Position numbers and translations under genes: made by a program. Shown here in pieces: positions 4,602 through 63,600 of a stretch of DNA of 64,000 nt. The notes under the pieces were generated by a model. The model was not told where the DNA came from. It worked only from the letters and a program-made list of their open reading frames with translations, and made no database searches. The first letter of the stretch is position 1; every line of letters starts with the position of its first letter. The DNA comes from Obrimoposthia wandeli (taxonomy: Eukaryota), in contig CDROCS010000817.1 in NCBI GenBank assembly GCA_977020255.1, forward strand, positions 434,001-498,000. The letters run 5' to 3'.

Positions 4602-4609
4602 TATATAAG
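4602..4609 (+). promoter_or_regulatory. Candidate LTR TATA box (TATATAAG)
   Basis: Same octamer lies about 400-450 bp from the LTR start in four LTR variants (4602, 30255/39033 minus, 39915, 57827); position conserved, activity not shown. Confidence 0.55.
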
Positions 4610-4974
4610 TCTACGGAAATCAGCCTATCAAGAGAGCCCAACTCAAGCGATCTACAAGAGAATTCTCGGCAGAAACAATCTTATTCCTGATCTACGGAAA
4701 CGAGCCCAACTCAAGCGATCTACAAGAGAATTCTCGGCAGAAACAATATCATTCCTGATCGAAACCGAACGCCAAGCAGAGGTAAGAAAACAGTTAGAAA
4801 AGAACATCGTTAACACAAACATACAGAAAAGAAACGAGACACGCCAACTGTCAAGGGCGTAAACCACGAATCGGCGGACAGGAAGTCACTGTTCCGAAGA
4901 GACAAGGAGCGCCGGAACTAGGATCCGATCGAGACGGAAATTATCTACAGATTTGGAAGGTGAGCCAGAAGAAT

Positions 4975-6305: not shown

Positions 6306-6756
6306 ATTTTGGAAACAAACCCTTCAGACTTTTTAGGCTACTTAAATTTTAGAGCAACGGCTCTCTAAAATCAATCCCTATTTTTAGAGTAAAGACTCTA
6401 GTGACTAAAACAAACATAACCGTAAAATCGATACGTGGTTCATCCCCACTTGTGCAGAGACTTACGAAAGTCTTAGGAATTTTACTACAACTTTTTAGAA
6501 AATACGTACGTAAACGTATTGTTCATTTGCCTAGTGTGTTAACAATAAACGATTTCCTACATTAGAAAACGTTGTTTTAAACCCTTCAGTTTAAGAGACG
6601 TCAAACAAACACCTTCAGATAAGCAATTGAGATAGGCAACCATAACACTAAGTAGGCCACGACCAACTTTAAGACCTGCTTCTATTCGAACTCACGTTGG
6701 GGCCCTCCGCACACAAGAGGATCTATACAAGTCTCGTATAGAAACCCCAACACACC

Positions 6757-28789: not shown

Positions 28790-28793
28790 GTAT

Positions 28794-30657
28794 TGTTGGG
28801 GTTTCTATACGAAACTTGGTACAGATCCTCTTATGTGCGGAGGGCCCCAACGTGAGTTCGATTAGAAGCAGGTCTTAAAGTTGGTCGTGGCCTACTTAGT
28901 GTTATGGTTGCCTAATCTCTTGTACTATCTGAAGGTATTTGATTTGATGTCTCTTATTCTGAAGGGTGCAAAACAACTTGTTCTAATGTAGGAAATTGTT
29001 TATTTGTAATTCACGTAACTAACACAACAATACGTTTATGTACGTATTTCTAAAAAGTATGATAAAATTCCTAGGACTTCTGTAAGTCTCTACAAGAAGT
29101 GGGGATGAACCACGTATCGATTTTACGTTCAGGTGATTAAGCTTTTAGGTTTATTCTTCTTACTTAGGTTGGTTAATCTATAACGCAACTCTCTTAAATT
29201 TCTTCGCTCCTACTTCTTATATCTAGATAAAGTTTCTTGATTCCTTAACTCTATCTGCTGTGTGTTTGACCCCGAATTGTCCACTGTGAACAATGGGTCT
29301 CCTAAAAACCTAATTGTCAAAGATGACAATGAAAACTTACTCCGAATTGTCAACTACGGACAATGAATGAACCGAATTGTCAGCTAGGGACAATGAGTCT
29401 TACCGAATTGTCAACTAGGGACAATGAGTATTTGTCCGAATTGTCAACTAGGGACAATGAATGAACCGAATTGTCAGCTAGGGACAATGAGTCTTACGGA
29501 AAAAAGTCTGGTATAATTCCTAATTGTCGCTGGGGACAATGAATAAAATAGATGATCTTAATTGCCAACTAGGGACAATGATTAGGTTAATGAGTCAGCA
29601 ATCCTAATTGCCAGCTAGGGGCAATGAATGTGTTTACTAGGTTAAAATTTAGAATTACCAACAAGGGGTAATGAAGGTATCCTAATTGCCAACTAGGGGC
29701 AATGAATGCTCTAGTCGGTTGGCTTACCAATACGCTGCGACTAGTGCGGCTTCCGGTGCAGGATCCGTATGGAGCGCTTGCGAGTCTGGCGGAACCGTCC
29801 TCAAAGTCAACTGTAGCTTTCGACTTCTTCCGCGCTTTTCACTTCTTTCGAACCTTTCAATCTGGATACCGACTCGACTTTCAACACTGATTCGATATTC
29901 AAATATTGGTTCAACTTCAATTTCGGATTCGATATTTCAATATTGGTTCAACTTCAATTACGGATTCGATATTACAATTTGGTTCAACTTCAATTACGGA
30001 TTCGATATTACAATTTGGTTCAACTTCAATTACGGATTCGATATTACAATTTGGTTCAACTTCAATTACGGATTCGATATTACAATTTGGTTCAACTTTT
30101 CACACTGATCTAAATAATTTTAACTCTACCTATTCCCAATCACCACTTACCGATTCGTGGTCGAGGGGATTGTCTTCTGTCTAATTGCTTCTTCTTTTTT
30201 CCAGTCGACTCTGTAGTTGATTCCGTATTTGTGTTTTCTGTTTTGGCGATCTGCCTTATATAGAGGCAAGTCTGTCAATCAAATCGACAGCTGCTTAATG
30301 GTCGCGGGAATTCACTTGAATTCTTCTGGAATATATCTGAAATTTATTAACCTTATTGCACTTAAAATGTGCTTACCTTTTCCTGATTGACGTCTCTTAA
30401 TTGACGTTTCTAATTGATCCTTTTTTCTGTAATTAATTCTAAATTGTTCGCTTTTTGGGTTAATTAATTCAACTTATATACATCTCACATTATACACGAC
30501 CTTCGTGGTCCTCCTAATTTTTACCCTAACTTCCACTAATTTCAATTCTAAAACTAAAATTAATATTTAATTTAATTTTCAACCTTGCTTTCAAGGATTT
30601 TTATTTTAGTATTTAATCGACTAAAATATTTAAATTTCTTAATTCTCAAACCTAACA
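28794..30657 (-). repeat. 3' LTR of element A (1864 bp)
   Basis: Direct repeat of 37571-39435; by eye only two substitutions and one 1-bp indel; contains a degenerate ~30-bp array (29270-29700) and a 36-bp array (~29905-30100). Confidence 0.96.
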
Positions 30658-30876
30658 TACCTCGGGGGTTCCAAAAAAGTTACGTCCCCGGAACGTATCG
30701 ATTTTACTTATACAAGCCTCTGGCTGTTGATTTTAGGTTCATCCCTACAAAATCAATCATTCAACTTCAACAAACATGCCCAAAACAAAATTTCTCAAAA
30801 TCCCGGTTTTTAGTGGGAAACATAATGTATAATTTGGAGCAAGTCTCAAACCATACATTATTACTTATACACAAAA

Positions 30877-33834
30877 CTACATGAGTAAACAAGGATTAGG
30901 AAGGAAAGAAGGGAGGAAAGGATTCAACGTTGTCAATTGTCGTAAGTTAGGTCTATTGTAATTGTCGGCTGGTTCCGACTGGCCAGGTAACGTTATCCAT
31001 AGATTATTCGTCATCTGATATTCAGGTGCCATTATATTAGAGCAGCTGATTTCTTTAGTTGGAGTGTCTTTTGGAAGTAACATTCTCGTGATTGGTTCAA
31101 CAAAAAGATCTTTTAAATTATACGTTACTGCCAATTCACTCGTACATCGATCTGTTTTCCTCAACTGTACCTCTACTTTATTACACTTGTAAGTATACAA
31201 TACTTCTCCCATGGTTTTAGCAAATACTCCTTCATCCAAGGGTAATAATGGTGCTACCATGTCTGGATTCGTAATAGCTAATGCTAACTTTGTTCTTACG
31301 ATCTCTTTGTTTAGCTGGCAATCTCTTTCGATCATCATCCGATATAACTGTTCCATTTGCATCAATCCTTTATGATAATAGAAATCAATTTTATTATTAA
31401 AATACGTGTGTAGCTGCATATCTTTAGGTTTTAGCTTGGTTTCTGCCAATGCTATTGCTTCTTTGGACAAAACTATTCCTGGATAGTTTGTAGTACTAAC
31501 AGTCATTCCGCATCGCGCTTTGTTTTTCTTTTTAATAAATATCAATCCTTCTTCTATTGATGTTGCCATTAATAGTGTAGGTGTTTTTGTCATTGGAATT
31601 GGTCTTGTTTCATTGAGCAATCCCTTTCCAACTTTATTATACAGGAATCCTTCTCCATCTTTATTATACAGGAATCCTTTTATTTTTTTAAAGCTAATAT
31701 CTTTCAAAAATACTAAAGAGCATTGCTTCGGATTTATGTTATACACAATTGTGGATTCGCCTGTGAAACAAGATGTATCTGTCATTTTACATTCTGGATA
31801 CTTCATCATTAGTTGTGTCTTTTTATCAAAATTGGCGGTCCATGTTTTTAATTCGATTTTGTAAGTTACATCCATTACTAACTCGGCTACTTTGGTTCCA
31901 CGCACGTTTTTTGTTTCTCCGTCACAAGATCCATCGGCCCATCGTTGTCCGACTCTCGTGACTGTTTCGTATCGTCTCACTCCAATTTTTACATCAGGTT
32001 TGTAATTCTTGTCTACCTCTATCGTTCCCGTTCGAAATGCGTCTTCGCAATCTCTCGGCAAAACCTTATGTGCCTTGTACGGTGTGGTAGGTGTGATTTC
32101 TGACATAAAACTTCTATGGCCACAATAGAATTCGTGATAACTTGAATGGATTGAACATTCTTTCACTTCTACTTGTACTTTATCAACATCCTGATACACA
32201 AAGTAGTTTTCAACACCTTTAACTTCTAGTTTTGACGGTTGTGACTCTGGACAGTCTTCGCTGTCAAGCAGTGAATACTTTTGTCCCATCTTTGGTATGC
32301 TACAGTCGTATGCTATCAATCCTGATGCCTGTTGCATTCCCATAAACATTACTAACATCATCATCATCATTGTTGTGGACATATTTGGTTGATTGTTTCT
32401 CTCTTTCGGACGGTATTGTTTATTTTCCTTTTGACGATTCTCATGACATTGTTCGTCATCGTCTTCATTCATTTCCACAATGGTTTTAGCGTAGTCACTT
32501 AATTTTGCCCAACCTCCGTTTTCGTCAATTCGTCTCTGTAATACATTCTCTATCAAGTACATCGCTTCATTTATTCCTTGTTTGACTTCGTGAGGTTGGC
32601 TCGTTCGTTCCGTCAATTGGAAACATAGATATGTGATCGCTGTAATTAACTTTTTATTTGTAGTCTGGTTTCCACATAGTCTCGCTAAAACTTCACCGTC
32701 ATAAAATCTATCTATCGATGCATGGTATACATGATTCGCAGTCATTCTCTTTACTGCAGACATCTGTGATCTGACTGCTTTAGTCAAATTGTCTGTTATA
32801 TCGGTTGTTTCATCTCTGTACATTTTAAACAACTTCGGCTTCACTTGCCTGAGAATTCCCGTAAGTATATCTTTACTACTTGGAGTTTCCGAATTCATAT
32901 CACCTCTGATATCTTCATTCCTCTCTGCACTATACTGCTCTAATGACGCTGCTAACTGTCCAATACTTAGATGTCTCTCTTCATCAGTTTGTGGTGCAGT
33001 TAGAACATTTCGTAATATACTTTCGCCTTTTCTAGGTCTTCCAGGTCCTCTTCGAAAATACTGATACTCAGCTTGATTCTCTCCTGGATCATACGTTTCA
33101 CCATTATACTGTATATCTTGACTTGGTCCTTCTTCATGGCCAATCTCTTCATTTTGTCGCATCATTTGCTCTGCTTGTCTATCTTTGTATGCAGCATGCC
33201 AAATTGGTGAGTCCAAATCTACAATCTCGGAGACTTCGTCTTCTCCTACTAGTTGGGTTACGGTTTCGTTTTGTCGCACTTGGTTAGCTGTATCCGTGAC
33301 TTCATCTTGTCTGATTGGAATTATATCTGGTTCTGGTGGCACCTCGACCACTGGAGTTGTCAACTCATTTTCTAAATTCATGTCTTGTAATTCAGCTACG
33401 TACGGTTCTGGTGTGGATGTCTTGTTCCAAGCTTCAGCTACATCATTATCTCCGCTTTCGCTTGAACTGTCTAAAATTTCTATAGGCGTTTTTATCATTT
33501 CTAACGCAGAATTCAATATCTCGGTTAATCCTTCATTATCTACTAACTCTTGACGTCCTACAGTGATGACATCAATTTTTTCCTCTAATTCATTTCCTAT
33601 CGGATATCCACACTCGACTGGTACGTCCTCATCATCTAGTGATCTCCCTTTATAATGGAACAACATATTCATTCCATCAATTTCGAGTTTCTCGGCCAAT
33701 TTTTTTCGAATCGTTTTCATTGTTTGATACACGTTAGGTTTTTCATGTATTATCTGTCCGGAAATTAATCGAAGTGAAATTTTCATCGTTCCTTTTTGGT
33801 TTGATTTCTGTACATAACGACCATAACCTTTCAA
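30877..33834 (-). CDS. Multidomain ORF: ubiquitin-like domain, acidic linker, AT-hook, Bcl-2-like domain, internal signal sequence, truncated class III fusion glycoprotein
   Basis: 985 open codons, first ATG at 33786. Ubl MKISLRLISGQ..LFHYKGRSLDDED; RRGPGRPRK; LQRRIDENGGWAKLSDY; MMMMMLVMFMGMQQASG then LIAYDC..FYCGHRS..DGSCDG..MGEVLYTYKC..LFVEPITRML, a Cys and motif pattern like chuvirus-type G proteins. Confidence 0.88.
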   Translation of the reverse strand: MKGYGRYVQKSNQKGTMKISLRLISGQIIHEKPNVYQTMKTIRKKLAEKLEIDGMNMLFHYKGRSLDDEDVPVECGYPIGNELEEKIDVITVGRQELVDNEGLTEILNSALEMIKTPIEILDSSSESGDNDVAEAWNKTSTPEPYVAELQDMNLENELTTPVVEVPPEPDIIPIRQDEVTDTANQVRQNETVTQLVGEDEVSEIVDLDSPIWHAAYKDRQAEQMMRQNEEIGHEEGPSQDIQYNGETYDPGENQAEYQYFRRGPGRPRKGESILRNVLTAPQTDEERHLSIGQLAASLEQYSAERNEDIRGDMNSETPSSKDILTGILRQVKPKLFKMYRDETTDITDNLTKAVRSQMSAVKRMTANHVYHASIDRFYDGEVLARLCGNQTTNKKLITAITYLCFQLTERTSQPHEVKQGINEAMYLIENVLQRRIDENGGWAKLSDYAKTIVEMNEDDDEQCHENRQKENKQYRPKERNNQPNMSTTMMMMMLVMFMGMQQASGLIAYDCSIPKMGQKYSLLDSEDCPESQPSKLEVKGVENYFVYQDVDKVQVEVKECSIHSSYHEFYCGHRSFMSEITPTTPYKAHKVLPRDCEDAFRTGTIEVDKNYKPDVKIGVRRYETVTRVGQRWADGSCDGETKNVRGTKVAELVMDVTYKIELKTWTANFDKKTQLMMKYPECKMTDTSCFTGESTIVYNINPKQCSLVFLKDISFKKIKGFLYNKDGEGFLYNKVGKGLLNETRPIPMTKTPTLLMATSIEEGLIFIKKKNKARCGMTVSTTNYPGIVLSKEAIALAETKLKPKDMQLHTYFNNKIDFYYHKGLMQMEQLYRMMIERDCQLNKEIVRTKLALAITNPDMVAPLLPLDEGVFAKTMGEVLYTYKCNKVEVQLRKTDRCTSELAVTYNLKDLFVEPITRMLLPKDTPTKEISCSNIMAPEYQMTNNLWITLPGQSEPADNYNRPNLRQLTTLNPFLPSFLPNPCLLM

Positions 33835-33849
33835 TAATCCTCGGGGTAC

Positions 33850-35919
33850 TTATTTGTAACCCAAGTTATCATGGCTATGTTTAACCAATTCTGCTCGCAC
33901 TTCTTCCAATCGGTGCACTTTAATTGTTTGCAATTTGGCCAAAACTTCTGGAGCTTCACTCGTTTCATCTAACGGTTGATTCAACGTTTCCTTAGCTTCA
34001 CTAATTATCTTTTTTACATTTTCCATACTCATAGCATTTCTCGCTGCTTCTACATGATCAGTCATAGGTTGTGCGTTACACGTTTTCTCTATTGGTGTCT
34101 CATACGCTTCTAATATTCTATTCATTAAATCGTTCATCTCTTCTCTCGAGTGTAGACTTTTCTCTTGTTTCGACAACGTAGATGAATTCGCCATCTTTGT
34201 ATGTGGTGAATCTTTAATTATTCCCAACATTCGTTCAAATTTACTATCACTATCTTCAAAATCTATTTCGCGTCGAAGCTCGGTTTCGCGATTCCTATCA
34301 CTGTCATCGCTTACATAACTAAAATTTCCTTTCGGTTTCGGCGAACTCTCACGACTACTTGTCTTGTCGACATTATTATTATTATATCTACCAGAATTAT
34401 TATATCTCTCAGCTCCTTGCTGTCCTACGTAATTATTGTATCTCTCAGCTCCTTGCTGTCTGTCTGCATAGTTATTGTATCTACCTGGTGACTGTTGTCT
34501 ATCTGTATACTGATTATTCAGTCTCCATGGCTGTGGAGTATATCCACCACCTCTATTCCATGGCGGAGGTGAATTATATCCTCTATAATTATTTCCAAAA
34601 TTATTATTACCGAAATTATTATTTCCAAATCTGTTAGTTCCGAACTCTTTGTTTCTCGTACAATCTCTCGAATAGTGACCCATTTGTTTACACGTGTAAC
34701 ACATTATTCTCCCTCGAATATCTATCTTATTTTGTTCATCTTCGAACTGCACTCGACGACTATTCTGTCTATTATCATAGCGCCCTTTAAAATCATTTCT
34801 TCGGAAATTCGATTCAAAACCGCTTCCTCGATTATTGAATCTTCCGTCGCTATTTCCTGTATTATTTCCAAATCGAGAGTCACTTCGCTCTCCTCTGTTG
34901 GTGTTATAATTCCTATCGTCTCCTCTCCAAGGTTGGCGATTTCCTGAATTATCTCTATTAAATCTATTCCTGGAATCATCTCTATTTCTACTCCACGAAT
35001 CATTATTATTTCTACCTCTTGAATCATCTCGATTCCTGTTCCAAGACTCACTATTATTTCTACCTCTGGAATCATCTCGATTCCTACTTCGGAAATTATC
35101 TCTATTTCCGTTACTGGATTCATCTACTTTTTCAAACTTATTTTGTCCATAATTTCGATTCTGAAAATTACTCGGTTCTGTTTTATTCACAAAGACCTTT
35201 GTCTTATCGTCGTCAGCTGCAGTCATTGCGTAAATTGCCAATGCTGCATTATTTTTTATATTTTTCTCAATCTCTCTCGCCTTTCGTACGGCGTTATCAA
35301 AATCATTTGTATCTGATACTGCTAATAACACTTTAATATCCTTTTTCAATCCTCCTCTAAATATATCTAACAAAACCTCTGCCATTTCATTTTGGTTTCG
35401 GTCATTTTCCGCTACTTGTGCTTCTTGAGGTACAGGAATACCGTCCTGATTTCTCATTATTCTTCTTGGGTACGCTCTTGCGGCCAAGGTTCTCAAAACA
35501 TACGCGTATTCATTCACGCCTTCATCATGTTTCTGTTTCCGTTCTCTCATGAGTCGCTTATTTACTTTGGCTAAGTCTCCTAATACCAATTTTCCAATAA
35601 AAGCATTTTCTAACGTTGGCCAATCTATGCGTTCTGCTTCTGTCAAATGTTTATACACTTCAAGTGCTAATCCGGTTAAATGTGCCTGTACTCGGACACA
35701 TTTTTCTTTATCGTTCCATCCTTGAACATCCGCACAACTCGAATATTCTGCGAGGAAGTCACAAATACTTTCCTCATCTCCTTTAAACTTTGTAATCTGC
35801 AATGATCCTGAAAAATTGGGTCTCAACGTCGCATTTAAAGCTTGTGCCAACTGCTCGGCATTCATTTCACCTACATTATTTCCTGCATTAATATCTGGTG
35901 GAGCTCCTTGGTGAGCCAT
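33850..35919 (-). CDS. gag: Ty3/Gypsy-type Gag, 689 aa from the first ATG
   Basis: KFKGDEESICDFLAEYSSCADVQGWNDKEK capsid-like region, RKQKHDEGVNEY, RDDSRGRN repeats, CCHC knuckle CYTCKQMGHYSRDC at 34660-34701. Confidence 0.92.
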   Translation of the reverse strand: MAHQGAPPDINAGNNVGEMNAEQLAQALNATLRPNFSGSLQITKFKGDEESICDFLAEYSSCADVQGWNDKEKCVRVQAHLTGLALEVYKHLTEAERIDWPTLENAFIGKLVLGDLAKVNKRLMRERKQKHDEGVNEYAYVLRTLAARAYPRRIMRNQDGIPVPQEAQVAENDRNQNEMAEVLLDIFRGGLKKDIKVLLAVSDTNDFDNAVRKAREIEKNIKNNAALAIYAMTAADDDKTKVFVNKTEPSNFQNRNYGQNKFEKVDESSNGNRDNFRSRNRDDSRGRNNSESWNRNRDDSRGRNNNDSWSRNRDDSRNRFNRDNSGNRQPWRGDDRNYNTNRGERSDSRFGNNTGNSDGRFNNRGSGFESNFRRNDFKGRYDNRQNSRRVQFEDEQNKIDIRGRIMCYTCKQMGHYSRDCTRNKEFGTNRFGNNNFGNNNFGNNYRGYNSPPPWNRGGGYTPQPWRLNNQYTDRQQSPGRYNNYADRQQGAERYNNYVGQQGAERYNNSGRYNNNNVDKTSSRESSPKPKGNFSYVSDDSDRNRETELRREIDFEDSDSKFERMLGIIKDSPHTKMANSSTLSKQEKSLHSREEMNDLMNRILEAYETPIEKTCNAQPMTDHVEAARNAMSMENVKKIISEAKETLNQPLDETSEAPEVLAKLQTIKVHRLEEVRAELVKHSHDNLGYK

Positions 35920-36454
35920 ATCTTCAACTATATCGTCTTCAACTATTCCTTCAATATTATTTACTTGAACTTCTTCAATCACTACTGGATTGGCAATTTC
36001 AATTTCTTCTGGGTTTTGAACTTCAAGATTATCAATTTCTTCTGGGTTTATGTCACCAAATAACTCAGTCAGCTCAAAACTGTCGGTTGAAACTGCTGAT
36101 TGATCAACGTCTCTTTCTGATACGTTTTCTTCGACTCTAGTCTTTTCTGTTACTTTGTTATCTGTTTGGGGAACCTGTTCAATTCGGTCAACTTTATTAT
36201 TATTTGTCTCTTCCTTGGGAATCTGGCTTTGTCTTCTAGTATTAAACGTGGGTCCTTTTCTATTATCCGTTGTCTTATCAATTATGTATTCGTTTACGAT
36301 ATCAATTTACTTATTATTTTTTATCTTATTTCACAATTCTTATTTTACGATTTTTTATCTCTTTAATTAGTTCGAGGACAGAGTCTCCCGACTTAACTTA
36401 TTCAATTAATTACTTCGAGTATCAATCCACTCGATTCTCACTTATCAAATTTAC

Positions 36455-37200
36455 TGACTCGAGGAACAAATCCACTCGACTTCTCAAAAACTTATCGAAT
36501 TCTTACTTCGAGGAACAAATCTACCCGATTTCTCAAAAACTTATCAAATTCTTAACTTCGAGGAACAAATCTACCCGATTTCTCAAAAACTTATCAAATT
36601 CTTAACTTCGAGGAACAAATCTACCCGATTTCTCAAAAACTTATTAAATTCTTAACTTCGAGGAACAAATCTACCCGATTTCTCAAAAACTTATCAAATT
36701 CTTAACTTCGAGGAACAAATCTACCCGATTTCTCAACACTTATCAAATTCTTAACTTCGAGGAACAAATCTACTCGATTTCTCAAAACCTATCAAATTCT
36801 TAACTTCGAGGAACAAATCTACTCGATTTCTCAAAACTTATCAAATTCTTAACTTCGAGGAACAAATCTACCCGATTTCTCAAAAACTTATCAAATTCTT
36901 AACTTCGAGGAACAAATCTACTCGATTTCTCAAAACTTATCAAATTCTTAACTTCGAGGAACAAATCTACCCGATTTCTCAAAAACTTATCAAATTCTTA
37001 ACTTCGAGGAACAAATCTACTCGATTTCTCAAAACTTATCAAATTCTTAACTTCGAGGAACAAATCTACCCGATTTCTCAAAAACTTATCAAATTCTTAA
37101 CTTCGAGGAACAAATCTACTCGATTTCTCAAAACTTATCAAATTCTTAACTTCGAGGAACAAATCTACTCGATTTCTCAACACTTATCAAATTCTTATCT
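36455..37200. repeat. 49-50-bp tandem array (about 15 units) in the 5' leader of element A
   Basis: AACTTCGAGGAACAAATCTACCCGATTTCTCAAAAACTTATCAAATTCTT at 36554, 36604, 36654 and onward. Confidence 0.95.
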
Positions 37201-37515
37201 CAATTTACTTATATCTTCTTCTGAAACTTATTCTAAATTTGCTTATATCTTCTTCTGAAACTTATTCTCAATTGTCTATATTCTTCTGCTGAAACTTATT
37301 CTCAATTTATCTGAAACTTATTCTCAATTTATCTGAAACTTATTCTTAATATCTGAAACTTATTCTTAATATCTGAAACTTATTCTTAATATCTGAAACT
37401 TATTCTTAATATCTGTACTTATTTTATTTACCTGAAACTTATTCTCAATTATCTGAAACTTATCCGAACTTATTCTATTTACCTGAAACTTATTCTCAAT
37501 TATCTGAAACTTATC
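37200..37515. repeat. ~20-bp tandem array in the leader next to the PBS
   Basis: CTGAAACTTATTCTCAATTTAT-like units; equivalent array at ~59875-60110 in copy B. Confidence 0.9.
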
Positions 37516-37543
37516 TACGTGAATTCGCTGTGTCCGATGAGCT

Positions 37544-37562
37544 ATCCTCACTCGGGGCACCA
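37544..37562 (-). other. Primer-binding site complementary to the 3' end of elongator tRNA-Met
   Basis: TGGTGCCCCGAGTGAGGAT, 8 nt after the LTR end; the eukaryotic elongator tRNA-Met 3' end (..ATCCTCACACGGGGCACCA) matches at all but one position. Confidence 0.85.
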
Positions 37563-37570
37563 CTTTAATA

Positions 37571-39435
37571 TGTTGGGGTTTCTATACGAAACTTGGTACA
37601 GATCCTCTTATGTGCGGAGGGCCCCAACGTGAGTTCGATTAGAAGCAGGTCTTAAAGTTGGTCGTGGCCTACTTAGTGTTATGGTTGCCTAATCTCTTGT
37701 ACTATCTGAAGGTATTTGATTTGATGTCTCTTATTCTGAAGGGTGCAAAACAACTTGTTCTAATGTAGGAAATTGTTTATTTGTAATTCACGTAACTAAC
37801 ACAACAATACGTTTATGTACGTATTTCTAAAAAGTATGATAAAATTCCTAGGACTTCTGTAAGTCTCTACAAGAAGTGGGGATGAACCACGTATCGATTT
37901 TACGTTCAGGTGATTAAGCTTTTAGGTTTATTCTTCTTACTTAGGTTGGTTAATCTATAACGCAACTCTCTTAAATTTCTTCGCTCCTACTTCTTATATC
38001 TAGATAAAGTTTCTTGATTCCTTAACTCTATCTGCTGTGTGTTTGACCCCGAATTGTCCACTGTGAACAATGGGTCTCCTAAAAACCTAATTGTCAAAGA
38101 TGACAATGAAAACTTACTCCGAATTGTCAACTACGGACAATGAATGAACCGAATTGTCAGCTAGGGACAATGAGTCTTACCGAATTGTCAACTAAGGACA
38201 ATGAGTATTTGTCCGAATTGTCAACTAGGGACAATGAATGAACCGAATTGTCAGCTAGGGACAATGAGTCTTACGGGAAAAAAGTCTGGTATAATTCCTA
38301 ATTGTCGCTGGGGACAATGAATAAAATAGATGATCTTAATTGCCAACTAGGGACAATGATTAGGTTAATGAGTCAGCAATCCTAATTGCCAGCTAGGGGC
38401 AATGAATGTGTTTACTAGGTTAAAATTTAGAATTACCAACAAGGGGTAATGAAGGTATCCTAATTGCCAACTAGGGGCAATGAATGCTCTAGTCGGTTGG
38501 CTTACCAATACGCTGCGACTAGTGCGGCTTCCGATGCAGGATCCGTATGGAGCGCTTGCGAGTCTGGCGGAACCGTCCTCAAAGTCAACTGTAGCTTTCG
38601 ACTTCTTCCGCGCTTTTCACTTCTTTCGAACCTTTCAATCTGGATACCGACTCGACTTTCAACACTGATTCGATATTCAAATATTGGTTCAACTTCAATT
38701 TCGGATTCGATATTTCAATATTGGTTCAACTTCAATTACGGATTCGATATTACAATTTGGTTCAACTTCAATTACGGATTCGATATTACAATTTGGTTCA
38801 ACTTCAATTACGGATTCGATATTACAATTTGGTTCAACTTCAATTACGGATTCGATATTACAATTTGGTTCAACTTTTCACACTGATCTAAATAATTTTA
38901 ACTCTACCTATTCCCAATCACCACTTACCGATTCGTGGTCGAGGGGATTGTCTTCTGTCTAATTGCTTCTTCTTTTTTCCAGTCGACTCTGTAGTTGATT
39001 CCGTATTTGTGTTTTCTGTTTTGGCGATCTGCCTTATATAGAGGCAAGTCTGTCAATCAAATCGACAGCTGCTTAATGGTCGCGGGAATTCACTTGAATT
39101 CTTCTGGAATATATCTGAAATTTATTAACCTTATTGCACTTAAAATGTGCTTACCTTTTCCTGATTGACGTCTCTTAATTGACGTTTCTAATTGATCCTT
39201 TTTTCTGTAATTAATTCTAAATTGTTCGCTTTTTGGGTTAATTAATTCAACTTATATACATCTCACATTATACACGACCTTCGTGGTCCTCCTAATTTTT
39301 ACCCTAACTTCCACTAATTTCAATTCTAAAACTAAAATTAATATTTAATTTAATTTTCAACCTTGCTTTCAAGGATTTTTATTTTAGTATTTAATCGACT
39401 AAAATATTTAAATTTCTTAATTCTCAAACCTAACA
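37571..39435 (-). repeat. 5' LTR of element A (1865 bp)
   Basis: Sense strand starts TGTTAGG and ends CCCCAACA, followed by the PBS. Confidence 0.96.
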
Positions 39436-39461
39436 GTATCTTGTTACTTTTTTAATACTTG

Positions 39462-57232: not shown

Positions 57233-57969
57233 AGGATTCCTAACTCGTATATTTTGATGTTTTTTCCTTTTGAAATTCTTTCTAGATAATAAAAATTTCT
57301 CAGAAGAAGATTCATTCTAAAATAAAGAGACTTTTTAAAAAATAATGTTTGTAAAAAAATACATATAAGATACTGTTAGGTTTAGGAATTAAAAAATTAA
57401 AATAATAAATTGATTTTATAGTAAAATGAAAATCCTTGAAAGCAAGGTTAGAATTAAATAAATTTTAAAATCAAAATTAACATTATTTGAAGTTTAAATA
57501 AGATTAAATGTTAGAAGACCACGAAGGTCGTGTATGATGCGTTGTGTATATAAGTTAATTTTAAAGGAAACAAAAGTGCAAACTAATAAGCAAAAAATAA
57601 TCAGAAAAAGAAATTAATTAAGAAAGGAAAAGAAGTGATTAATAAAGAAAAACCACGTCAGCAGAAAGAAGATTGACAGCAAGAAACGTCAGCAAGAGTA
57701 AGCACATTTTTAGTGCAATTGATTTACCTAAATTGAAATTTAGCAGCTGTCGCCAATTCCTAAATTGCTCAGGAAATTGTTTGCTGAGTGACAACAACAC
57801 AATCCATTAAGCAGCTGTTGCCAGACTATATAAGTCTTTAGGAAAACCTATTACACACACACAGAAAAGCAATTTTAGCCGAGACGAGGATTGAGTCAGC
57901 GGAAAAAACTCTGGTGAGCGCTCCTAATTTTGAGCCTACATTAATTGCTAGAATTACAGAATTGGAAAC

Positions 57970-58450
57970 AAAAGCCACTATCCTCCAGTTCAATTCTCGA
58001 CCGAATAAGCCGTCGCAGCAAAAGCCACTATACTCCAGTTCAATTCTCGACCGAATAAGCCGTCGCAGCAAAAGCCACTATACTCCAGTTCAATTCTCGA
58101 CCGAATAAGCCGTCGCAGCAAAAGCCACTATCCCCCAGTTCAATTCTCGACCGAATAAGCCGTCGCAGCAAAAGCCACTATACTCCAGTTCAATTCTCGA
58201 CCGAATAAGCCGTCGCAGCAAAAGCCACTATACTCCAGTTCAATTCTCGACCGAATAAGCCGTCGCAGCAAAAGCCACTATCCCCCAGTTCAATTCTCGA
58301 CCGAATAAGCCGTCGCAGCAAAAGCCACTATACTCCAGTTCAATTCTCGACCGAATAAGCCGTCGCAGCAAAAGCCACTATCCCCCAGTTCAATTCTCGA
58401 CCGAATAAGCCGTCGCAGCAAAAGCCACTATCCTCCAGTTCAATTCTCGA
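57970..58450. repeat. 50-bp tandem array (about 10 units) in LTR-B
   Basis: AAAGCCACTATACTCCAGTTCAATTCTCGACCGAATAAGCCGTCGCAGCA at exact 50-bp spacing. Confidence 0.95.
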
Positions 58451-58519
58451 CCAAATAAACAGACGCTGCAACTTTGGAATTGAGATAGGTGAGAGGAGAG
58501 TAATAGGCTAGGGTTTTAA

Positions 58520-59300
58520 AATAATTTCACATTTTCCAATTGTAAAAGGAGTTTTAACCTCCATTGATTTGATTTTCATATTTCCAATTTTAAAAGGAGT
58601 TTTAACCTCCATTGATTTGATTTTCATATTTCCCCATTTGTAAAAGGAGTTTTAACCTCCATTGATTTGATTTTCATATTTCCCAATTTTAAAAGGAGTT
58701 TTAACCTCCATTGATTTGATTTTCATATTTCCAATTTTAAAAGGAGTTTTAACCTCCATTGATTTGATTTTCATATTTCCCAATTGTAAAAGGAGTTTTA
58801 ACCTCCATTGATTTGATTTTCATATTTCCAATTTTAAAAGGAGTTTTAACCTCCATTGATTTGATTTTCATATTTCCCCATTTGTAAAAGGAGTTTTAAC
58901 CTCCATTGATTTGATTTTCATATTTCCCAATTGTAAAAGGAGTTTTAACCTCCATTGATTTGATTTTCATATTTCCAATTTTAAAAGGAGTTTTAACCTC
59001 CATTGATTTGATTTTCATATTTCCCAATTTTAAAAGGAGTTTTAATCTCCATTGATTTGATTTTCATATTTCCCAATTTTAAAAGGAGTTTTAACCTCCA
59101 TTGATTTGATTTTCATATTTCCCAATTTTAAAAGGAGTTTTAACCTCCATTGATTTGATTTTCATATTTCCAATTTTAAAAGGAGTTTTAACCTCCATTG
59201 ATTTGATTTTCATATTTCCCAATTTTAAAAGGAGTTTTAACCTCCATTGATTTGATTTTCATATTTCCCAAATTTAAAAGGAGTTTTTGACCTCCATTGA
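58520..59300. repeat. 48-50-bp tandem array (about 16 units) in LTR-B
   Basis: AAAAGGAGTTTTAACCTCCATTGATTTGATTTTCATATTTCCCAATTTT repeated. Confidence 0.95.
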
Positions 59301-59829
59301 TCTGCAATTTATTAAAGTTTGTCCAACTTTAAGGAAGCTTTTACATCACCACCTTTATTGACATAAAATTAAAGGTTTAACCTCAAAAGTTAAAGCCGAC
59401 AGTAGAGTTAATTTGATTTGAAAAATCTATAACGTGAGCTTATTCTCGAGTCACAGGAACAACTCTAAAATCTCGATCACCCTTAGCGTAAAATCGATAC
59501 GTGGTTCATCCCCACTTGTGTAGAGACTTACAGAAGTCTTAGGAATTTTTACCATACTTTTTAGAAGATACGTACATAAACGTATTGTTGTGTTTTAGTC
59601 TAGTGTGTTACCAATAAACGATTTCCTACATTAGAAAACGTTGTTTTAAACCCTTCAGAATAAGAGACGTCAAACAAACACCTTCAGATAAGAAATAGAG
59701 ATAGGCAACCATAGCACTAAGTAGGCCACGACCAACTTTAAGACCTGCTTCTATTCGAACTCACGTTGGGGCCCTCCGCACACAAGAGGATCTATACAAG
59801 TCTCGTATAGAAACCCCAACATATTAAAG

Positions 59830-59848
59830 TGGTGCCCCGAGTGAGGAT
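59830..59848 (+). other. Primer-binding site (elongator tRNA-Met) of element B
   Basis: TGGTGCCCCGAGTGAGGAT after the same TATTAAAG spacer as in element A. Confidence 0.85.
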
Positions 59849-60658
59849 AGCTCGTCGGACACAGCGAATTCACATATAATAAGTTTCAGATAAATTGAGA
59901 ATAAGTTTCAGATAAATAGAATAAGTTTCAGATAAATTGAGAATAAGTTTCAGATAAATAGAATAAGTTTCAGATAAATTGAGAATAAGTTTCAGACAAA
60001 TTGAGAATAAGTTTCAGCAGAAGAATATAGACAATTGAGAATAAGTTTCAGAAGAAGATATAAGCAAATTTAGAATAAGTTTCAGAAGAAAATATAAGTA
60101 AATTGAGATAAGAATTTGAATAAGTTGAGAAATCGAGTAGATTTGTTCCTCGAAGTTAAGAATTTGATAAAGTTGAGAATCGAGTGGATTGATACTCGAA
60201 GTAATTAATTGAATAGGTTAAGTCGGGAGACGTGTCCTCGAACTAATTAAAGAGATAAGAAATCGTAAAATAAGAATTGTGAAATAAGGTAAAATAATAA
60301 ATAAATTGATATCGTAAACGAATACATAATTGATAAGCCAACGGATAATAGAAAAGGACCCGCGTATAATACTAGAAGACAAAGTCAGATTCCCCAGGAA
60401 GAGATAAATAATAATTAAGTTAACCGAATTGAACAGGTTCCCCAAACAGATAACAAAGTAACAGAAAAGACTAGAGTCGAAGAAAACGTATCAGAAAGAG
60501 ACGTTGATCAATCAGCGGTTTCAACCGACAGTTTTAATTTGACTGAATTATTTGGTGACATAAACCCAGAAGAATTTTAAATTGCCAATCCAGTAGTGAT
60601 TGAGGAAGTTCAATTGAATAATCTTGAAGAAATAGTTGAAGAGGATATAGCTGAAAAT

Positions 60659-63600
60659 ATGGCTCACCCAGGAGCTCAAGCAGATAATAATGCAGGAAAT
60701 AATGTAGGTGACATGAATGCCGAACAGTTGGCACAAGCCCTAAATGCGACGTTGAGACCCAACTTTTCAGGATCATTGCAGATTACAAAGTTTAAAGGAG
60801 ATGAGGAAAGTATTTGTGACTTCCTCGCAGAATATTCGAGTTGTGCAGATGTTCAAGGATGGAACGATAAAGAAAAATGTGTCCGAGTACAGGCACACTT
60901 AACCGGATTAGCACTTGAAGTGTATAAACATTTGACAGAAGCAGAACGTTTAGACTGGCCAACGTTGGAAAATGTTTTTATTGGAAAATTGGTATTAGGA
61001 GACTTAGCCAAAGTAAATAAGCGACTCATGAGAGAACGGAAACAGAAACATGATGAAGGCGTGAATGAATACGCGTATGTTTTGAGAACCTTGGCCGCAA
61101 GAGCGTACCCAAGAAGAATAATAAGAACTCCAGAAGGTATTCCTGTAGCTCAAGAAGCACAAGTAGCGGAAAATGACCGGAACCAAAATGAAATGGCAAA
61201 GGTTTTGTTAGATATATTTAGAGGAGGACTGAAAAAAGATATTAAAGTATTATTGGCTCTATCGGATACAAATGATTTTGATAACGCCGTGCGAAAGGCG
61301 AGAGAGATTGAGAAAAATATAAAAAATAACGCAGCATTGGCATTTTACGCAATGACTGCAGGTGACGACGATAAGACAAAGGTATTCGTGAATAAAACAG
61401 AACCGAGTAATTTTCAGAACCGAAATTATGGACAAAATAAGTTTGAAAAAGTAGATGAATCCAGTAACGGAAACAGAGATAATTTCCGAAGTAGGAATCG
61501 AGATGATTCCAGAGGTAGAAATAATAGTGAGTCTTGGAACAGGAATCGAGGTGATTCAAGAGGTAGAAATAGTAATGATTCGTGGAATAGAAATAGAGAT
61601 GATTCCAGGAATAGATTTAATAGAGATAATTCAGGAAATCGCCAACCTTGGAGAGGAGACGATAGGAATTATAACGCAAACAGAGGAGAGTGAAGTGACT
61701 CTCGATTTGGGAATAATACAGGAAGTAGTGACGGAAGATTCAATAATCGAGGAAGCGGTTTTGAATCGAATTTCCGAAGAAATGATTTTAGAGGACGCTA
61801 TGATAATAGACAGAATAGTCGTCGAGTACAGTTCGAAGATGAACAAAATACGATAGATATTCGAGGGAGAATAATGTGTTACACGTGTAAACAAATGGGT
61901 CACTATTCGAGAGATTGTACGAGAAGTAAAGAGTTCGGAACTAACAGATTTGGAAATAATAATTTCGGTAATAATAATTTTGGAAATAATTATAGAGGAT
62001 ATAATTCACCCCCGCCATGGAATAGAGGTGGTGGATATACTCCACAGCCACGGAGACCGAATAATCAGTATACAGATAGACAACAGTCACCAGGTAGATA
62101 CAATAACTATGCAGACAGACAGCAAGGAGCTGAGAGATACAATAATTACGTAGGACAGCAAGGAGCTGAGAGATATAATAATTCCGGTAGATATAATAAT
62201 AATAATGTTGACAAGACAAATAGTCGCGAGAGTTCGCCGAAACCGAAAGGAAATTTTAGTTATGTAAACGATGACAGCGATAGGAATCGCGAGACCGAAC
62301 TTCGACGCGAAATAGATTTTGAAGATAGTGATAGTAAATTTGAACGAATGTTGGGAATACTTAAAGATTCACCACATACAAAGATGGCGAATTCATCTAC
62401 GTTGTCGAAATAAGAAAAAAGTCTACACTCGAGAGAAGAGATGAATGATTTAATGAATCAAATACTAGAAGCGTATGAGACACCAATAGAGAAAACGTGT
62501 AACGCACAACCTATGACCGATCATGTAGAAGCAGCAAGAAATGCTACGAGTATGGAAAATGTAAAAAAGATAATTAGTGAAGCTAAGGAGACGTTGAATC
62601 AACCGTTAGACGAAACGAGTGAAGCTCCAGAAGTTTTGGCCAAATTACAAACAATTAAAGTGCACAGATTGGAAGAAGTGCGAGCAGAATTGGTTAAACA
62701 TAGTCATGATAACTTGGGTTACAAAGAAGTACCACGAGGATTATTGAAAGGTTATGGTCGCTACGTACAGAGATCAAACCAAAAAGGAACGATGAAAATT
62801 TCACTTCGATTAATTTCCGGACAGATAATACATGAAAAACTTAACGTGTATCAGACAATGAAAACTATTCGAAAAAAGTTGGCCGAGAAACTTGAAATTG
62901 ATGGAATGAATATGTTGTTCCATTATAAAGGGAGATCACTAGATGATGAGGACGTACCAGTCGAGTGTGGATATCCGATAGGAAATGAATTAGAGGAAAA
63001 AATTGATGTCATCACTGTAGGACGACAAGAGTTAGTAGATAATGAAGGATTAACGGAGATATTGAACTCTGCGTTAGAAATGATAAAAACGCCTATAGAA
63101 ATTTTAGACAGTTCAAGCGAAAGCGGAGATAATGATGTAGCTGAAGCTTGGAACAAGACATCCACACCAGAACCGTACGTAGCTGAATTACAAGACATGA
63201 ATTTAGAAAATGAGTTGACAACTCCAGTGGTCGAGGTACCACCAGAACCAGATATAATTCAAATCAGACAAGATGAAGTCGCGGATACAGCTAACCAAGC
63301 GAGACAAACCGAAAACGTAACCCAACTAGTAGGAGAAGACGAAATCTCCGAAATTGTAGATTTAGATTCACCAATTTGGCATGCTGCATACAAAGATAGA
63401 CAAGCAGAGCAGATGATGCGACAAAATGAAGAGATTGGCCATGAAGAAGGACCAAGTCAAGAGATACAGTATAATGGTGAACCGTATGATCCAGGAGAGA
63501 ATCAAACTGAGTATCAGTATTTTCGAAGAGGACCTGGAAGACCTAGAAAGGATGGAAGTATATTACGAAATGTTTTAACTGCACCACAAACTGATGAGGA

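What the first reader, a model, noticed from the sequence alone, without database searches (positions are those of the whole stretch)
28794..39435. Recently mobile pol-less LTR element encoding a Gag-Ubl-Bcl-2-like-fusogen polyprotein
Seen: near-identical LTRs (three differences noticed), intact TSD and PBS, Gag with a CCHC knuckle, and a downstream in-frame ORF with ubiquitin-like, AT-hook, Bcl-2-like and class III glycoprotein segments; no PR, RT, RH or IN. A second copy and a solo LTR in the same 64 kb show family activity. Established: chuvirus G or gB-like env capture is known for some LTR elements. I know of no LTR element fusing such a glycoprotein to Gag through Ubl and Bcl-2-like modules. 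Inference: a virus-like retroelement lineage with host-manipulating cargo, here as a derivative mobilised in trans.
Basis: partly seen in the sequence, partly recalled or inferred. Interest (0 to 1): 0.93.

Follow-up and report, generated by a model that had tools for sequence, protein, structure and literature searches.

The report
Truncated Burro-like planarian-type retrovirus copy
This is a recently inserted but defective copy of a giant Gypsy-type endogenous retrovirus whose odd gene order (Gag, ubiquitin-like, Bcl-2-like, viral envelope protein, then the enzymes) was already described for the planarian 'Burro' elements, so it is real and well preserved but not a new kind of element.

Summary
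A 10,642-bp LTR element lies on the minus strand at 28794-39435. Its two 1.86-kb LTRs differ at three positions. It has TG..CA ends, a 4-bp target-site duplication, a PBS-like site and a Gag with one CCHC knuckle. A same-frame downstream reading frame carries a ubiquitin/SUMO-like domain, an AT-hook, a Bcl-2-fold domain and a Monjiviricetes-type fusion glycoprotein. There is no PR, RT, RH or IN.

The claim of novelty does not hold. Four relatives from public assemblies carry the same modules in the same order. They continue downstream into retropepsin domains and a Gypsy-type RT-RNaseH-integrase, and two of them also carry ankyrin repeats. One relative has all of this in a single 3,419-aa frame. 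This order (Gag, SUMO-like, BCL2-like, env in frame between gag and pol) was published for the planarian Burro elements (PMC6431247).

The window copy is a 3'-deleted derivative. One deletion removed the envelope's membrane anchor and all enzymes, and one in-frame stop separates Gag from the rest. Two copies in the window differ with dN/dS 0.16, so the cargo modules evolved under constraint. Whether the deletion came before integration (trans-mobilised subfamily), arose during it, or came after it cannot be decided from one window. Interest is modest.

The parts
28794..39435 (-). Whole LTR element (10,642 bp), a 3'-deleted Burro-like Gypsy-type provirus
   Evidence: LTR pair, TG..CA termini and TSD
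37571..39435 (-). 5' LTR (1,865 bp), containing 36-bp and roughly 100-bp internal tandem repeats
   Evidence: 99.84% identical to the 3' LTR; repeats
28794..30657 (-). 3' LTR (1,864 bp)
39436..39439 (-). Target-site duplication ATAC, 5' side of the element
28790..28793 (-). Target-site duplication ATAC, 3' side of the element
37545..37562 (-). PBS-like 18-mer beginning TGG, 8 nt downstream of the 5' LTR
   Evidence: identical in copy 2; the tRNA partner was not identified
36388..37514 (-). Leader region with an array of 49-50-bp tandem repeats between the PBS and gag
30877..35982 (-). Single reading frame Gag-Ubl-AT-hook-Bcl-2-like-signal-glycoprotein. It is broken by one in-frame stop (between the Gag and Ubl parts) and by one 3' deletion that removed the end of the glycoprotein and all downstream genes. 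There are no frameshifts.
35203..35802 (-). Gag N-terminal capsid-like region, conserved with the relative L001
   Evidence: tblastn 25-27% identity to L001 gag, E=1e-22; the L001 region gives a weak Retrotrans_gag match, E=0.0077; no PDB hit by sequence
34657..34701 (-). CCHC zinc knuckle of Gag
   Evidence: Pfam PF00098 E=7e-6
33535..33786 (-). Ubiquitin/SUMO-like beta-grasp domain. It starts with its own ATG and has no C-terminal di-glycine.
33013..33051 (-). AT-hook (GRP core) inside an acidic linker, which is probably disordered
32401..32883 (-). Bcl-2-fold helical domain with a BH2-like GGW motif
   Evidence: Pfam Bcl-2 is the top hit at E=0.092; a 4-sequence profile hits Bcl-xL, Bcl-2 and Bax at E about 0.01; AF2 pLDDT 81.5, pTM 0.77; Foldseek PDB top 50 are all Bcl-2 family, TM 0.5-0.7; BFVD top hits are viral Bcl-2 homologues
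32320..32382 (-). Met-rich hydrophobic segment (signal-peptide-like) between the Bcl-2-like domain and the glycoprotein ectodomain
   Evidence: An aligned hydrophobic segment is present in L001, L003 and L004; the cleavage role is inferred
30988..32319 (-). Glycoprotein ectodomain, Monjiviricetes_fusion family. It is incomplete: the match reaches profile position 444 of 653 and there is no membrane anchor.
57374..64000 (+). Second copy, cut by the window end. Its 5' LTR is 57374-59821 and its PBS is 59830-59847.
60581..64000 (+). Copy 2 gag-Ubl-(part of Bcl-2-like) frame. It has two in-frame stops in gag, has no indels relative to copy 1, and stays open across the gag/Ubl junction.
4164..6752 (+). 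Solo LTR of the same family (2,589 bp) with TSD CACC. Its ends are conserved, and its middle is filled with 39-bp and 127-bp tandem arrays.

Best explanation
The region is a young, defective provirus of a Burro-like lineage of giant Ty3/Gypsy-type (Metaviridae) endogenous retroviruses. This kind is known from planarian flatworms. In the family, one long reading frame (or a few) encodes, in order: Gag (capsid-like region plus CCHC), a ubiquitin/SUMO-like domain, an AT-hook linker, a Bcl-2-fold domain, a signal-like hydrophobic segment, a mononegavirus/chuvirus-type envelope glycoprotein with a C-terminal membrane anchor, several retropepsin domains (with ankyrin repeats in some members), and RT-RNaseH-integrase. 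An exonuclease ORF follows. The window copy keeps the cis parts (both LTRs, PBS, repeat-rich leader) and the coding part from gag to mid-envelope. One deletion removed the rest of the envelope gene and all enzymes. One in-frame stop now separates Gag from the Ubl part. It therefore cannot reverse-transcribe or integrate itself and cannot make an anchored envelope protein. Near-identical LTRs and an intact target duplication show that it integrated recently. The enzymes for that came from a complete relative (inferred). Shown: the anatomy, the domain identities, the family gene order in relatives, the truncation, and purifying selection between the two window copies. Inferred: the source of the enzymes; that the hydrophobic segment sends the envelope ectodomain into the ER while Gag-Ubl-Bcl-2 stays cytosolic; that the Ubl and Bcl-2-like modules act on host ubiquitin/SUMO and cell-death pathways; and that the host is a planarian.
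For: LTR pair, TSD and PBS. Domain tests. Relatives at 31-37% identity align from the Bcl-2-like domain through the glycoprotein. L001 has gag, CCHC and Ubl in one ORF, followed by Bcl-2-like, G and two retropepsin domains in a 1,582-aa ORF, then an ankyrin ORF. L002 has Ubl plus AT-hook, then G, PR, Ank-PR and RT-RH-IN. L004 has Ubl, Bcl-2-like, G, PR domains, RT, RH and IN in one open 3,419-aa frame. The relatives' G proteins have a C-terminal hydrophobic anchor and the window copy has none. The window contains no PR, RT, IN or Ank homology of this family. [quoted passage not shown] Copy 1 versus copy 2: 1,135 gap-free codons, dN/dS 0.16 overall, 0.05 in the Ubl, and 0 non-synonymous against 7 synonymous changes in the Bcl-2-like part. 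Window G+C is 20-39%, which fits the >70% A/T planarian genome (PMC11410931).
Against: No Burro reference sequence could be compared, so family identity rests on shared architecture and not on measured sequence similarity. The copy and its relatives lack several motifs listed for Burro1 (MATH_TRAF_C, AIR1, Smc, BIR, dUTPase). Gag has one CCHC knuckle where Burro has two or three. The relatives' internal regions look nearer 15-18 kb than 25 kb. The host species is not identified, and the relatives come from unlabelled ENA and JGI assemblies. The Gag capsid fold is not confirmed. The class III fold of the glycoprotein was not modelled.
Confidence: 0.8

Rival explanations
1. The truncated form is a non-autonomous subfamily. 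The deletion predates this insertion, and copies with the same internal structure have been repeatedly mobilised in trans by complete relatives.
For: The insertion is very young (3 LTR differences). The cis elements are retained. An intact gag frame would still be useful for packaging. Purifying selection acted on gag, Ubl and Bcl-2-like between two copies that differ by dS 0.12. A second family member and a solo LTR lie within 64 kb.
Against: Only one copy with this structure is visible. Copy 2 runs off the window before the informative point, so it is unknown whether it shares the deletion. The low dN/dS is equally expected if both copies descend from complete, active masters.
Confidence: 0.4
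2. This is a dead-on-arrival copy. A complete parent was transcribed, and the deletion arose by template switching during the reverse transcription that produced this very insertion.
For: Internally deleted new copies are a common by-product of LTR-element replication (established knowledge). This would explain a young insertion with a unique structure without invoking a subfamily.
Against: There is no direct evidence. It cannot be told apart from the other two scenarios using one locus.
Confidence: 0.3
3. This was a complete provirus that lost its 3' internal half by a genomic deletion after integration.
For: The repeat-rich, A/T-rich surroundings with many tandem arrays favour deletions.
Against: Little time has passed since integration (0.1% LTR substitution divergence). 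The deletion stops short of the 3' LTR and leaves about 220 bp of non-coding sequence, so it is not an LTR-LTR recombination product.
Confidence: 0.2
4. One reading: a new pol-less retroelement lineage built around a dedicated Gag-Ubl-Bcl-2-fusogen polyprotein.
For: The modules are in one frame, and the Ubl and Bcl-2-like parts are under constraint.
Against: Relatives continue from the same glycoprotein into PR, RT, RH and IN. The glycoprotein here is cut before its anchor. The architecture is published. The stop after Gag is absent in copy 2 and in L001, so programmed read-through is unlikely.
Confidence: 0.03
5. A host-domesticated gene (Gag plus an anti-apoptotic module) that merely sits between old LTRs.
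For: dN/dS is below 1. A host benefit has been reported for another anti-apoptotic Burro1 module, B-IAP (Lee et al. 2026, as cited in PMC13465017).
Against: Near-identical LTRs and an intact target duplication indicate a new insertion, not an old fixed locus. A paralogous copy lies 18 kb away. There is no evidence of orthology or fixation.
Confidence: 0.03

Closest known systems
Burro / GYPSM1 giant Gypsy-like LTR retrotransposons of planarians (Jurka 2007; Grohme et al. 2018; Arkhipova and Yushenova 2019, PMC6431247)
   Same: N-terminal Gag with a CCHC knuckle. A SUMO/ubiquitin-like module immediately upstream of a BCL2-like module. A mononegavirus-type env lies between BCL2 and PR, in frame and upstream of pol. 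Relatives carry ankyrin repeats and a Gypsy-type RT-RH-IN. Tandem repeats occur inside the element. LTRs are long. The genomic background is A/T-rich.
   Different: This copy has lost everything from mid-env onward. Neither the copy nor its relatives show MATH_TRAF_C, AIR1, Smc, BIR or dUTPase motifs. It has one CCHC knuckle where Burro has two or three. The relatives look smaller (about 15-18 kb internal) than Burro1 (up to 25 kb). Sequence identity to the Burro references was not measured.
Anakin (BEL-Pao elements with a captured chuvirus glycoprotein, mosquitoes; PMC7642597)
   Same: An LTR element carrying a Jingchuvirales/mononegavirus-type glycoprotein as env. Many defective and pol-less derivatives and solo LTRs exist.
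   Different: Anakin has a BEL-Pao pol with env downstream of pol, and no Ubl or Bcl-2-like modules. Here the relatives' pol is Gypsy-type (RVT_1, RT_RNaseH, Integrase_H2C2, rve) and env lies upstream of PR.
Large retrotransposon derivatives and other non-autonomous LTR elements
   Same: LTRs, PBS and leader are kept, and the enzymes are missing.
   Different: This copy still carries gag and recognisable cargo and env coding sequence. Propagation as a subfamily is not shown.
Viral Bcl-2 homologues of large DNA viruses (gammaherpesvirus, iridovirus and asfarvirus vBcl-2)
   Same: A Bcl-2 fold encoded by a virus-like genome. These are the best structural matches in BFVD.
   Different: Here the domain is embedded in a retroelement polyprotein directly upstream of the env signal segment. 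Any anti- or pro-apoptotic activity is untested.

Membership tests
LTR retrotransposon / endogenous retrovirus (general) | Two direct LTRs with TG..CA ends, flanked by a short target-site duplication | tested here: met
   1,864/1,865-bp LTRs at 99.84% identity; 4-bp duplication ATAC
LTR retrotransposon / endogenous retrovirus (general) | Primer-binding site next to the 5' LTR that is complementary to a host tRNA 3' end | tested here: inconclusive
   A TGG-initiated 18-mer lies 8 nt after the LTR and is identical in copy 2. There is no tRNA gene in the window to compare it with.
LTR retrotransposon / endogenous retrovirus (general) | PR-RT-RH-IN coding capacity (autonomy) | tested here: not met
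   No such Pfam domain in either frame. No tblastn match to the relatives' PR, Ank or pol anywhere in the window.
Burro-like giant Gypsy elements (planarians) | N-terminal Gag with retrotrans_gag and CCHC knuckle(s) | tested here: met
   zf-CCHC E=7e-6. The capsid-like region is homologous to L001 gag, which gives a weak Retrotrans_gag match. There is one knuckle only.
Burro-like giant Gypsy elements (planarians) | Ubi2/SUMO-like module upstream of a BCL2-like module | tested here: met
   Ubl. Bcl-2 fold. The order Ubl, then AT-hook, then Bcl-2-like is seen in the window, L001, L002 and L004.
Burro-like giant Gypsy elements (planarians) | Mononegavirus-type env between BCL2-like and PR, in frame and upstream of pol | tested here: met
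   The window shows Bcl-2-like, signal segment and PF24664 in one frame. The continuation from env into PR and pol is shown in the relatives L001 and L004, not in this truncated copy.
Burro-like giant Gypsy elements (planarians) | Gypsy-type RT-RH-IN | tested here: not met
   Deleted in this copy. Present in the relatives L002 and L004 (RVT_1, RT_RNaseH, Integrase_H2C2, rve).
Burro-like giant Gypsy elements (planarians) | Extra motifs of Burro1 (MATH_TRAF_C, AIR1, Smc, BIR, ankyrin, dUTPase) and a size above 30 kb | tested here: not met
   None in the window copy. Only ankyrin repeats are seen, in the relatives L001 and L002. The element is 10.6 kb.
Burro-like giant Gypsy elements (planarians) | Sequence similarity to the Burro-1..4/GYPSM1 references; planarian host | not testable with these tools
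   No reference sequence or eukaryotic genome collection was available. Only the base composition (20-39% G+C) fits a planarian.
Anakin (BEL-Pao plus chuvirus G) | BEL-Pao type pol with env downstream of pol | tested here: not met
   The relatives' pol is Gypsy-type and lies downstream of env. The Pao peptidase fragment at 27101-27424 lies outside the element.
Bcl-2 family | Bcl-2 helical-bundle fold | tested here: met
   AF2 with a 5-row alignment: pLDDT 81.5, pTM 0.77. Foldseek PDB top 50 hits are all Bcl-2, Bcl-xL, Bcl-w, Mcl-1, Bax or viral Bcl-2, prob 1.0. Caveats: the alignment is shallow, and the five models ranged from pLDDT 51 to 81.
Bcl-2 family | BH1/BH2 sequence motifs at Pfam significance | tested here: inconclusive
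   Pfam Bcl-2 is the top hit but scores 13.7 bits against a cut-off of 31.4. The profile versus PDB gives E about 0.01, carried by the BH2-like GGW motif.
Bcl-2 family | Regulation of apoptosis through BH3-groove interactions | not testable with these tools
   No functional data
Ubiquitin-like (beta-grasp) modifiers | Ubiquitin/SUMO sequence profile | tested here: met
   The profile of three relatives versus PDB hits ubiquitin and SUMO at E from 5e-22 to 1e-4. A SUMO-like repeat protein is the only hit among 1.84 billion representatives.
Ubiquitin-like (beta-grasp) modifiers | C-terminal di-glycine for conjugation or protease release | tested here: not met
   No GG at the end of the domain in the window, L001 or L002
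Class III viral fusion glycoproteins (rhabdovirus G / gB / gp64 type) | Membership of a mononegavirus/jingchuvirus G family | tested here: met
   PF24664 E=2.3e-61
Class III viral fusion glycoproteins (rhabdovirus G / gB / gp64 type) | Class III three-dimensional fold | not tested
There were no PDB hits by sequence. Published modelling of chuvirus G on gB templates is only an indirect lead.
Class III viral fusion glycoproteins (rhabdovirus G / gB / gp64 type) | Complete ectodomain with a C-terminal membrane anchor | tested here: not met
   The match ends at profile position 444 of 653. There is no hydrophobic anchor, unlike P0002-P0005.

The most novel reading that the evidence does not exclude
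The hydrophobic segment right after the Bcl-2-like domain may do two jobs. It could be the signal that sends the envelope ectodomain into the ER. After signal-peptidase cleavage, it could also be the membrane tail-anchor of a retroelement-encoded Bcl-2 homologue. Pol-less copies like this one might then persist as expression vehicles for a Gag-Ubl-Bcl-2 cargo that modulates host cell survival. This would parallel the host benefit reported for the Burro1 B-IAP module.
Probability: 0.12. Interest if true: 0.65.

Novelty: new member of a known kind. Interest (0 to 1): 0.3.

Why it matters
The element shows that retroviruses of invertebrates can carry host-manipulating cargo (SUMO/ubiquitin-like and Bcl-2-like modules) and place a captured RNA-virus envelope gene upstream of pol. 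That was already reported for the planarian Burro elements. This analysis adds three things. First, a structure-level confirmation of the Bcl-2 fold. Second, evidence that the Ubl and Bcl-2-like modules evolve under purifying selection. Third, four relatives in public assemblies, one with an uninterrupted 3,419-aa frame, which show the same module order in smaller elements that lack several Burro1 motifs. For genome annotation, gag-plus-env fragments of this type should be filed as truncated Burro-like proviruses and not as a new class.

Tried and rejected
- Word-indexed protein search with the first 500 residues of the downstream frame found nothing.
- The exhaustive HMMER search of the Ubl-to-Bcl-2 part gave only a SUMO-like repeat protein.
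- Single-sequence AF2 of the helical domain was unusable at pLDDT 43. It was repeated with a 5-row alignment.
- Exact look-ups of the window's Gag and downstream protein in assembly collections found nothing on record, so the host could not be named.
- A profile search with the Bcl-2-plus-G alignment gave only one further distant G.
- The IMG/VR scan found no relative. The LTR-end-plus-PBS pattern in JGI metagenomes gave no match.
- Sequence searches of the G part and of the Gag capsid-like part against PDB gave no meaningful hits.
- The LTR-end and PBS motifs are not conserved in the relatives' contigs.
- Rfam and tRNA scans of the window found nothing.
- Troyka was considered and rejected. 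It has CG..CG termini and 3-bp duplications, whereas this element has TG..CA and 4 bp.
- Programmed stop read-through was considered and rejected, because copy 2 and L001 lack the stop.
- The Grohme 2018 and Lee 2026 papers are not held.

I treated this as a coordinate error and re-sent the row as an exact substring of P0002. (2) While counting stops in copy 2, I read the bounds of its open frames from my own ORF table and so worked with their places in my reasoning. Those places are not given in this report.


Full report
1. OBSERVATION

A repeat scan and a pairwise BLAST show two direct repeats, 28794-30657 and 37571-39435. They align over 1,865 columns at 99.84% identity with 2 mismatches and 1 gap. 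The coding strand is the minus strand. Read on that strand, the element begins TGTTAGG and ends CCCAACA. It is flanked on both sides by ATAC, a 4-bp target-site duplication. Eight bases inside the 5' LTR lies an 18-mer starting TGG (37545-37562). It recurs unchanged in the second copy. I could not test which tRNA it matches, because the window has no tRNA gene. No clear polypurine tract lies immediately before the 3' LTR. Between the PBS and gag is a 1.6-kb leader with a 49-50-bp tandem array.

2. CODING CONTENT OF THE WINDOW COPY

- One reading frame runs from 35982 down to 30877 and is interrupted by a single in-frame stop.
- The part before the stop is Gag. It has a capsid-like N-terminal region, long Asn/Arg/Gly-rich low-complexity stretches, one CCHC knuckle (Pfam E=7e-6) and a conserved C-terminal region.
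- The part after the stop starts, at its own ATG, with a ubiquitin-like domain.
- An acidic linker of about 220 residues follows (48 Asp+Glu), with an AT-hook (GRP core).
- Next come a helical domain, a Met-rich hydrophobic segment, and a glycoprotein ectodomain that matches Pfam PF24664 (Monjiviricetes_fusion) at E=2.3e-61.
- No PR, RT, RNase H or integrase domain is present. tblastn with the relatives' enzyme regions finds nothing anywhere in the window.

Ubl:
- Alone, it scores only Pfam ubiquitin E=0.005.
- The one hit among 1.84 billion representative proteins is a protein made of Rad60-SLD/SUMO-like repeats (E=2.7e-12).
- A profile of the window domain plus two relatives hits ubiquitin and SUMO chains in PDB, with E from 5e-22 for polyubiquitin to about 1e-4 for single domains.
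- It has no terminal di-glycine.

AT-hook:
- The GRP core sits at the equivalent place in the window, L001 and L002.
- Pfam AT_hook scores E=0.027 in L002.

Bcl-2-like domain:
- Alone, Pfam Bcl-2 is the top hit but falls below threshold (E=0.092).
- A four-sequence profile returns almost only Bcl-xL, Bcl-2 and Bax from PDB (best E=0.0097), aligned on the BH2-like GGW motif.
- AF2 on a single sequence failed (pLDDT 43).
- With a 5-row alignment it gave pLDDT 81.5 and pTM 0.77.
- All top 50 Foldseek hits in PDB are Bcl-2 family members, cellular and viral (prob 1.0, TM 0.5-0.7). The top BFVD hits are herpesvirus, iridovirus and asfarvirus Bcl-2 homologues.
- The alignment is shallow and the five models varied, so I rate the fold as well supported and the function as untested.

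Class III fusogen:
- Family membership (PF24664) is firm.
- The three-dimensional class was not tested (searches gave no PDB sequence hits).
- Published modelling of chuvirus G on gB templates is only a lead.

4. RELATIVES AND THE FAMILY GENE ORDER

The glycoprotein part found three proteins from one ENA assembly. A pattern scan found one JGI metagenome contig. Homology to the window frame begins at the Bcl-2-like domain and runs through the glycoprotein at 31-37% identity.

- L001: gag, CCHC and Ubl form one 949-aa ORF. A 1,582-aa ORF follows with Bcl-2-like, signal segment, G (profile positions 5-616 of 653) and two retropepsin-like domains. An ankyrin-repeat ORF comes next.
- L002: the order is Ubl plus AT-hook, G, a two-retropepsin ORF, an ankyrin-plus-retropepsin ORF, and a 1,515-aa RT-RNaseH-integrase of Gypsy type.
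- L004: Ubl, Bcl-2-like, G, retropepsins, RT, RNase H and integrase are one uninterrupted 3,419-aa frame. A separate ORF with an RNase_T exonuclease domain follows.

All relatives' glycoproteins have a C-terminal hydrophobic anchor. The window frame has none, and its Pfam match stops at profile position 444 of 653. The window element is therefore a 3'-deleted copy. One deletion removed the end of env and everything up to about 220 bp before the 3' LTR.

5. COMPARISON WITH THE LITERATURE

Arkhipova and Yushenova (2019, PMC6431247) summarise the planarian Burro elements (GYPSM1 of Jurka 2007; Grohme et al. 2018). They describe:
- a typical Gag with retrotrans_gag and two or three CCHC knuckles;
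- a BCL2-like motif;
- ankyrin repeats, BIR, dUTPase, and PR-RT-RH-IN;
- internal tandem repeats.

This is the module order found here.

Differences from Burro1:
- The window copy and its relatives show no MATH_TRAF_C, AIR1, Smc, BIR or dUTPase.
- There is only one knuckle.
- The relatives appear smaller.

I could not compare sequences with the Burro references, and I could not name the host. The window's 20-39% G+C fits the >70% A/T planarian genome. Anakin (BEL-Pao plus chuvirus G, env after pol) and Troyka (CG..CG ends, 3-bp duplications) do not fit.

6. FAMILY ACTIVITY IN THE WINDOW

- Copy 2 (57374-64000, plus strand) is cut by the window end. It has a 2,448-bp 5' LTR, the same PBS, and a coding region 94.8% identical to copy 1.
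- Over 1,135 codons the two copies align without any gap.
- Copy 2 has two in-frame stops in gag and none at the gag/Ubl junction. Copy 1 has one, at that junction.
- L001 is also continuous across the junction. The stop in copy 1 is therefore more likely a mutation than a programmed read-through site.
- dN/dS between the copies is 0.16 overall. By region: Gag N-terminal 0.23; Gag C-terminal 0.06; Ubl 0.05; linker 0.21; Bcl-2-like part 0 non-synonymous against 7 synonymous changes. The lineages leading to both copies were under protein-level constraint, cargo modules included.
- A solo LTR (4164-6752) has its own duplication, CACC.
- The three LTR versions share about 200-370 bp at each end, but different tandem arrays fill their middles.

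7. HOW IT MOST LIKELY WORKS

Shown: the copy has the cis elements and gag, but no enzymes and no anchored envelope.

Inferred:
- It was reverse-transcribed and integrated by enzymes from a complete relative.
- In complete elements, translation of the long frame keeps Gag-Ubl-AT-hook-Bcl-2 on the cytosolic side. The hydrophobic segment inserts the following ectodomain into the ER, and the retropepsins process the rest.
- The Ubl and Bcl-2-like modules plausibly act on host SUMO/ubiquitin and cell-death pathways, as suggested for Burro. This is in line with the reported anti-apoptotic role of the Burro1 B-IAP module (Lee et al. 2026, cited second-hand from PMC13465017).

Three origins of the deletion remain open: a non-autonomous subfamily (about 0.4), template switching during the founding reverse transcription (about 0.3), and post-integration loss (about 0.2).

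Age: with 2 substitutions in 1,864 bp, the insertion is very young. An absolute age would need a planarian mutation rate that I do not have.

8. VERDICT

The novelty claim is not supported. This is a new (or perhaps already catalogued) member of a known kind, present here as a defective copy. Interest is 0.3.

9. DECLARED SLIPS

I corrected the coordinates to an exact substring of that recorded protein and re-sent it.

(b) In working out the number of stops in copy 2, I read open-frame bounds from my own ORF table. The places are not reported.

Consensus lines printed by the alignment tool were not used.

Noticed in passing
window 1681-2571 (-): A separate fragment of a related glycoprotein gene. 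It is 32-33% identical to the C-terminal part of the relatives' G, the very part missing from the main element. It has no adjacent gag or pol of the family and is probably an older remnant.
   Followed up: partly
window 27101-27424 (-): A fragment of a BEL-Pao element (Peptidase_A17, E=1.3e-16) lies 1.4 kb outside the 3' LTR. It is unrelated to the Gypsy-type family of the finding.
   Followed up: partly
window 39462-39638 (+): A 177-bp stretch that is 71% identical to the first 177 bp of the solo LTR lies in the opposite orientation, only 26 bp from the element's 5' end. The element may have landed next to an older LTR fragment of its own family.
   Followed up: partly
window 39436-39442 and 57367-57373: The 7 bases immediately upstream of the 5' LTR are the same (AAGATAC) for the main element and for copy 2, although the flanks are otherwise unrelated. 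This could be a target-site preference or chance. The solo LTR does not share it.
   Followed up: partly
window 4164-6752, 28794-30657, 57374-59821: The three LTR versions share only their terminal 200-370 bp. Their centres hold different tandem arrays (units of 36, 39, 49-50 and 127 bp), which gives LTR lengths of 1.86, 2.45 and 2.59 kb.
   Followed up: partly
window 7221-7636, 8009-10055, 11286-12254, 13241-13889: Satellite-like arrays (units of 52/78, 175 and about 235 bp) lie in very A/T-rich DNA (G+C down to 20%). The 175-bp array has strong G-over-C skew.
   Followed up: no
window 49334-49711 (-): An open stretch encoding an immunoglobulin-type domain (Ig_3/V-set, E about 1e-7), probably an exon of a host gene. 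A possible transmembrane exon lies at 45113-45394 (-).
   Followed up: no
L004 10617-12107; L002 19578-20084; L001 1-2340: The relatives carry an extra ORF with an RNase_T-type 3'-5' exonuclease domain downstream of pol. In L001 it lies upstream of gag, which suggests a tandem or permuted contig. The text I read on Burro does not mention it.
   Followed up: partly
L001 7961-12709; L002 11271-14964; L004 23-10282: Between env and RT the relatives have two or three tandem retropepsin-like domains, and L001 and L002 also have ankyrin repeats there. That is an unusually redundant protease region.
   Followed up: no
L004 23-10282: A JGI metagenome contig (Ga0209893_1000090) carries an uninterrupted 3,419-aa frame from Ubl to integrase. 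It is 59-69% identical to the ENA contig L002, so the lineage is present in at least two unrelated public data sets of unknown host.
   Followed up: partly
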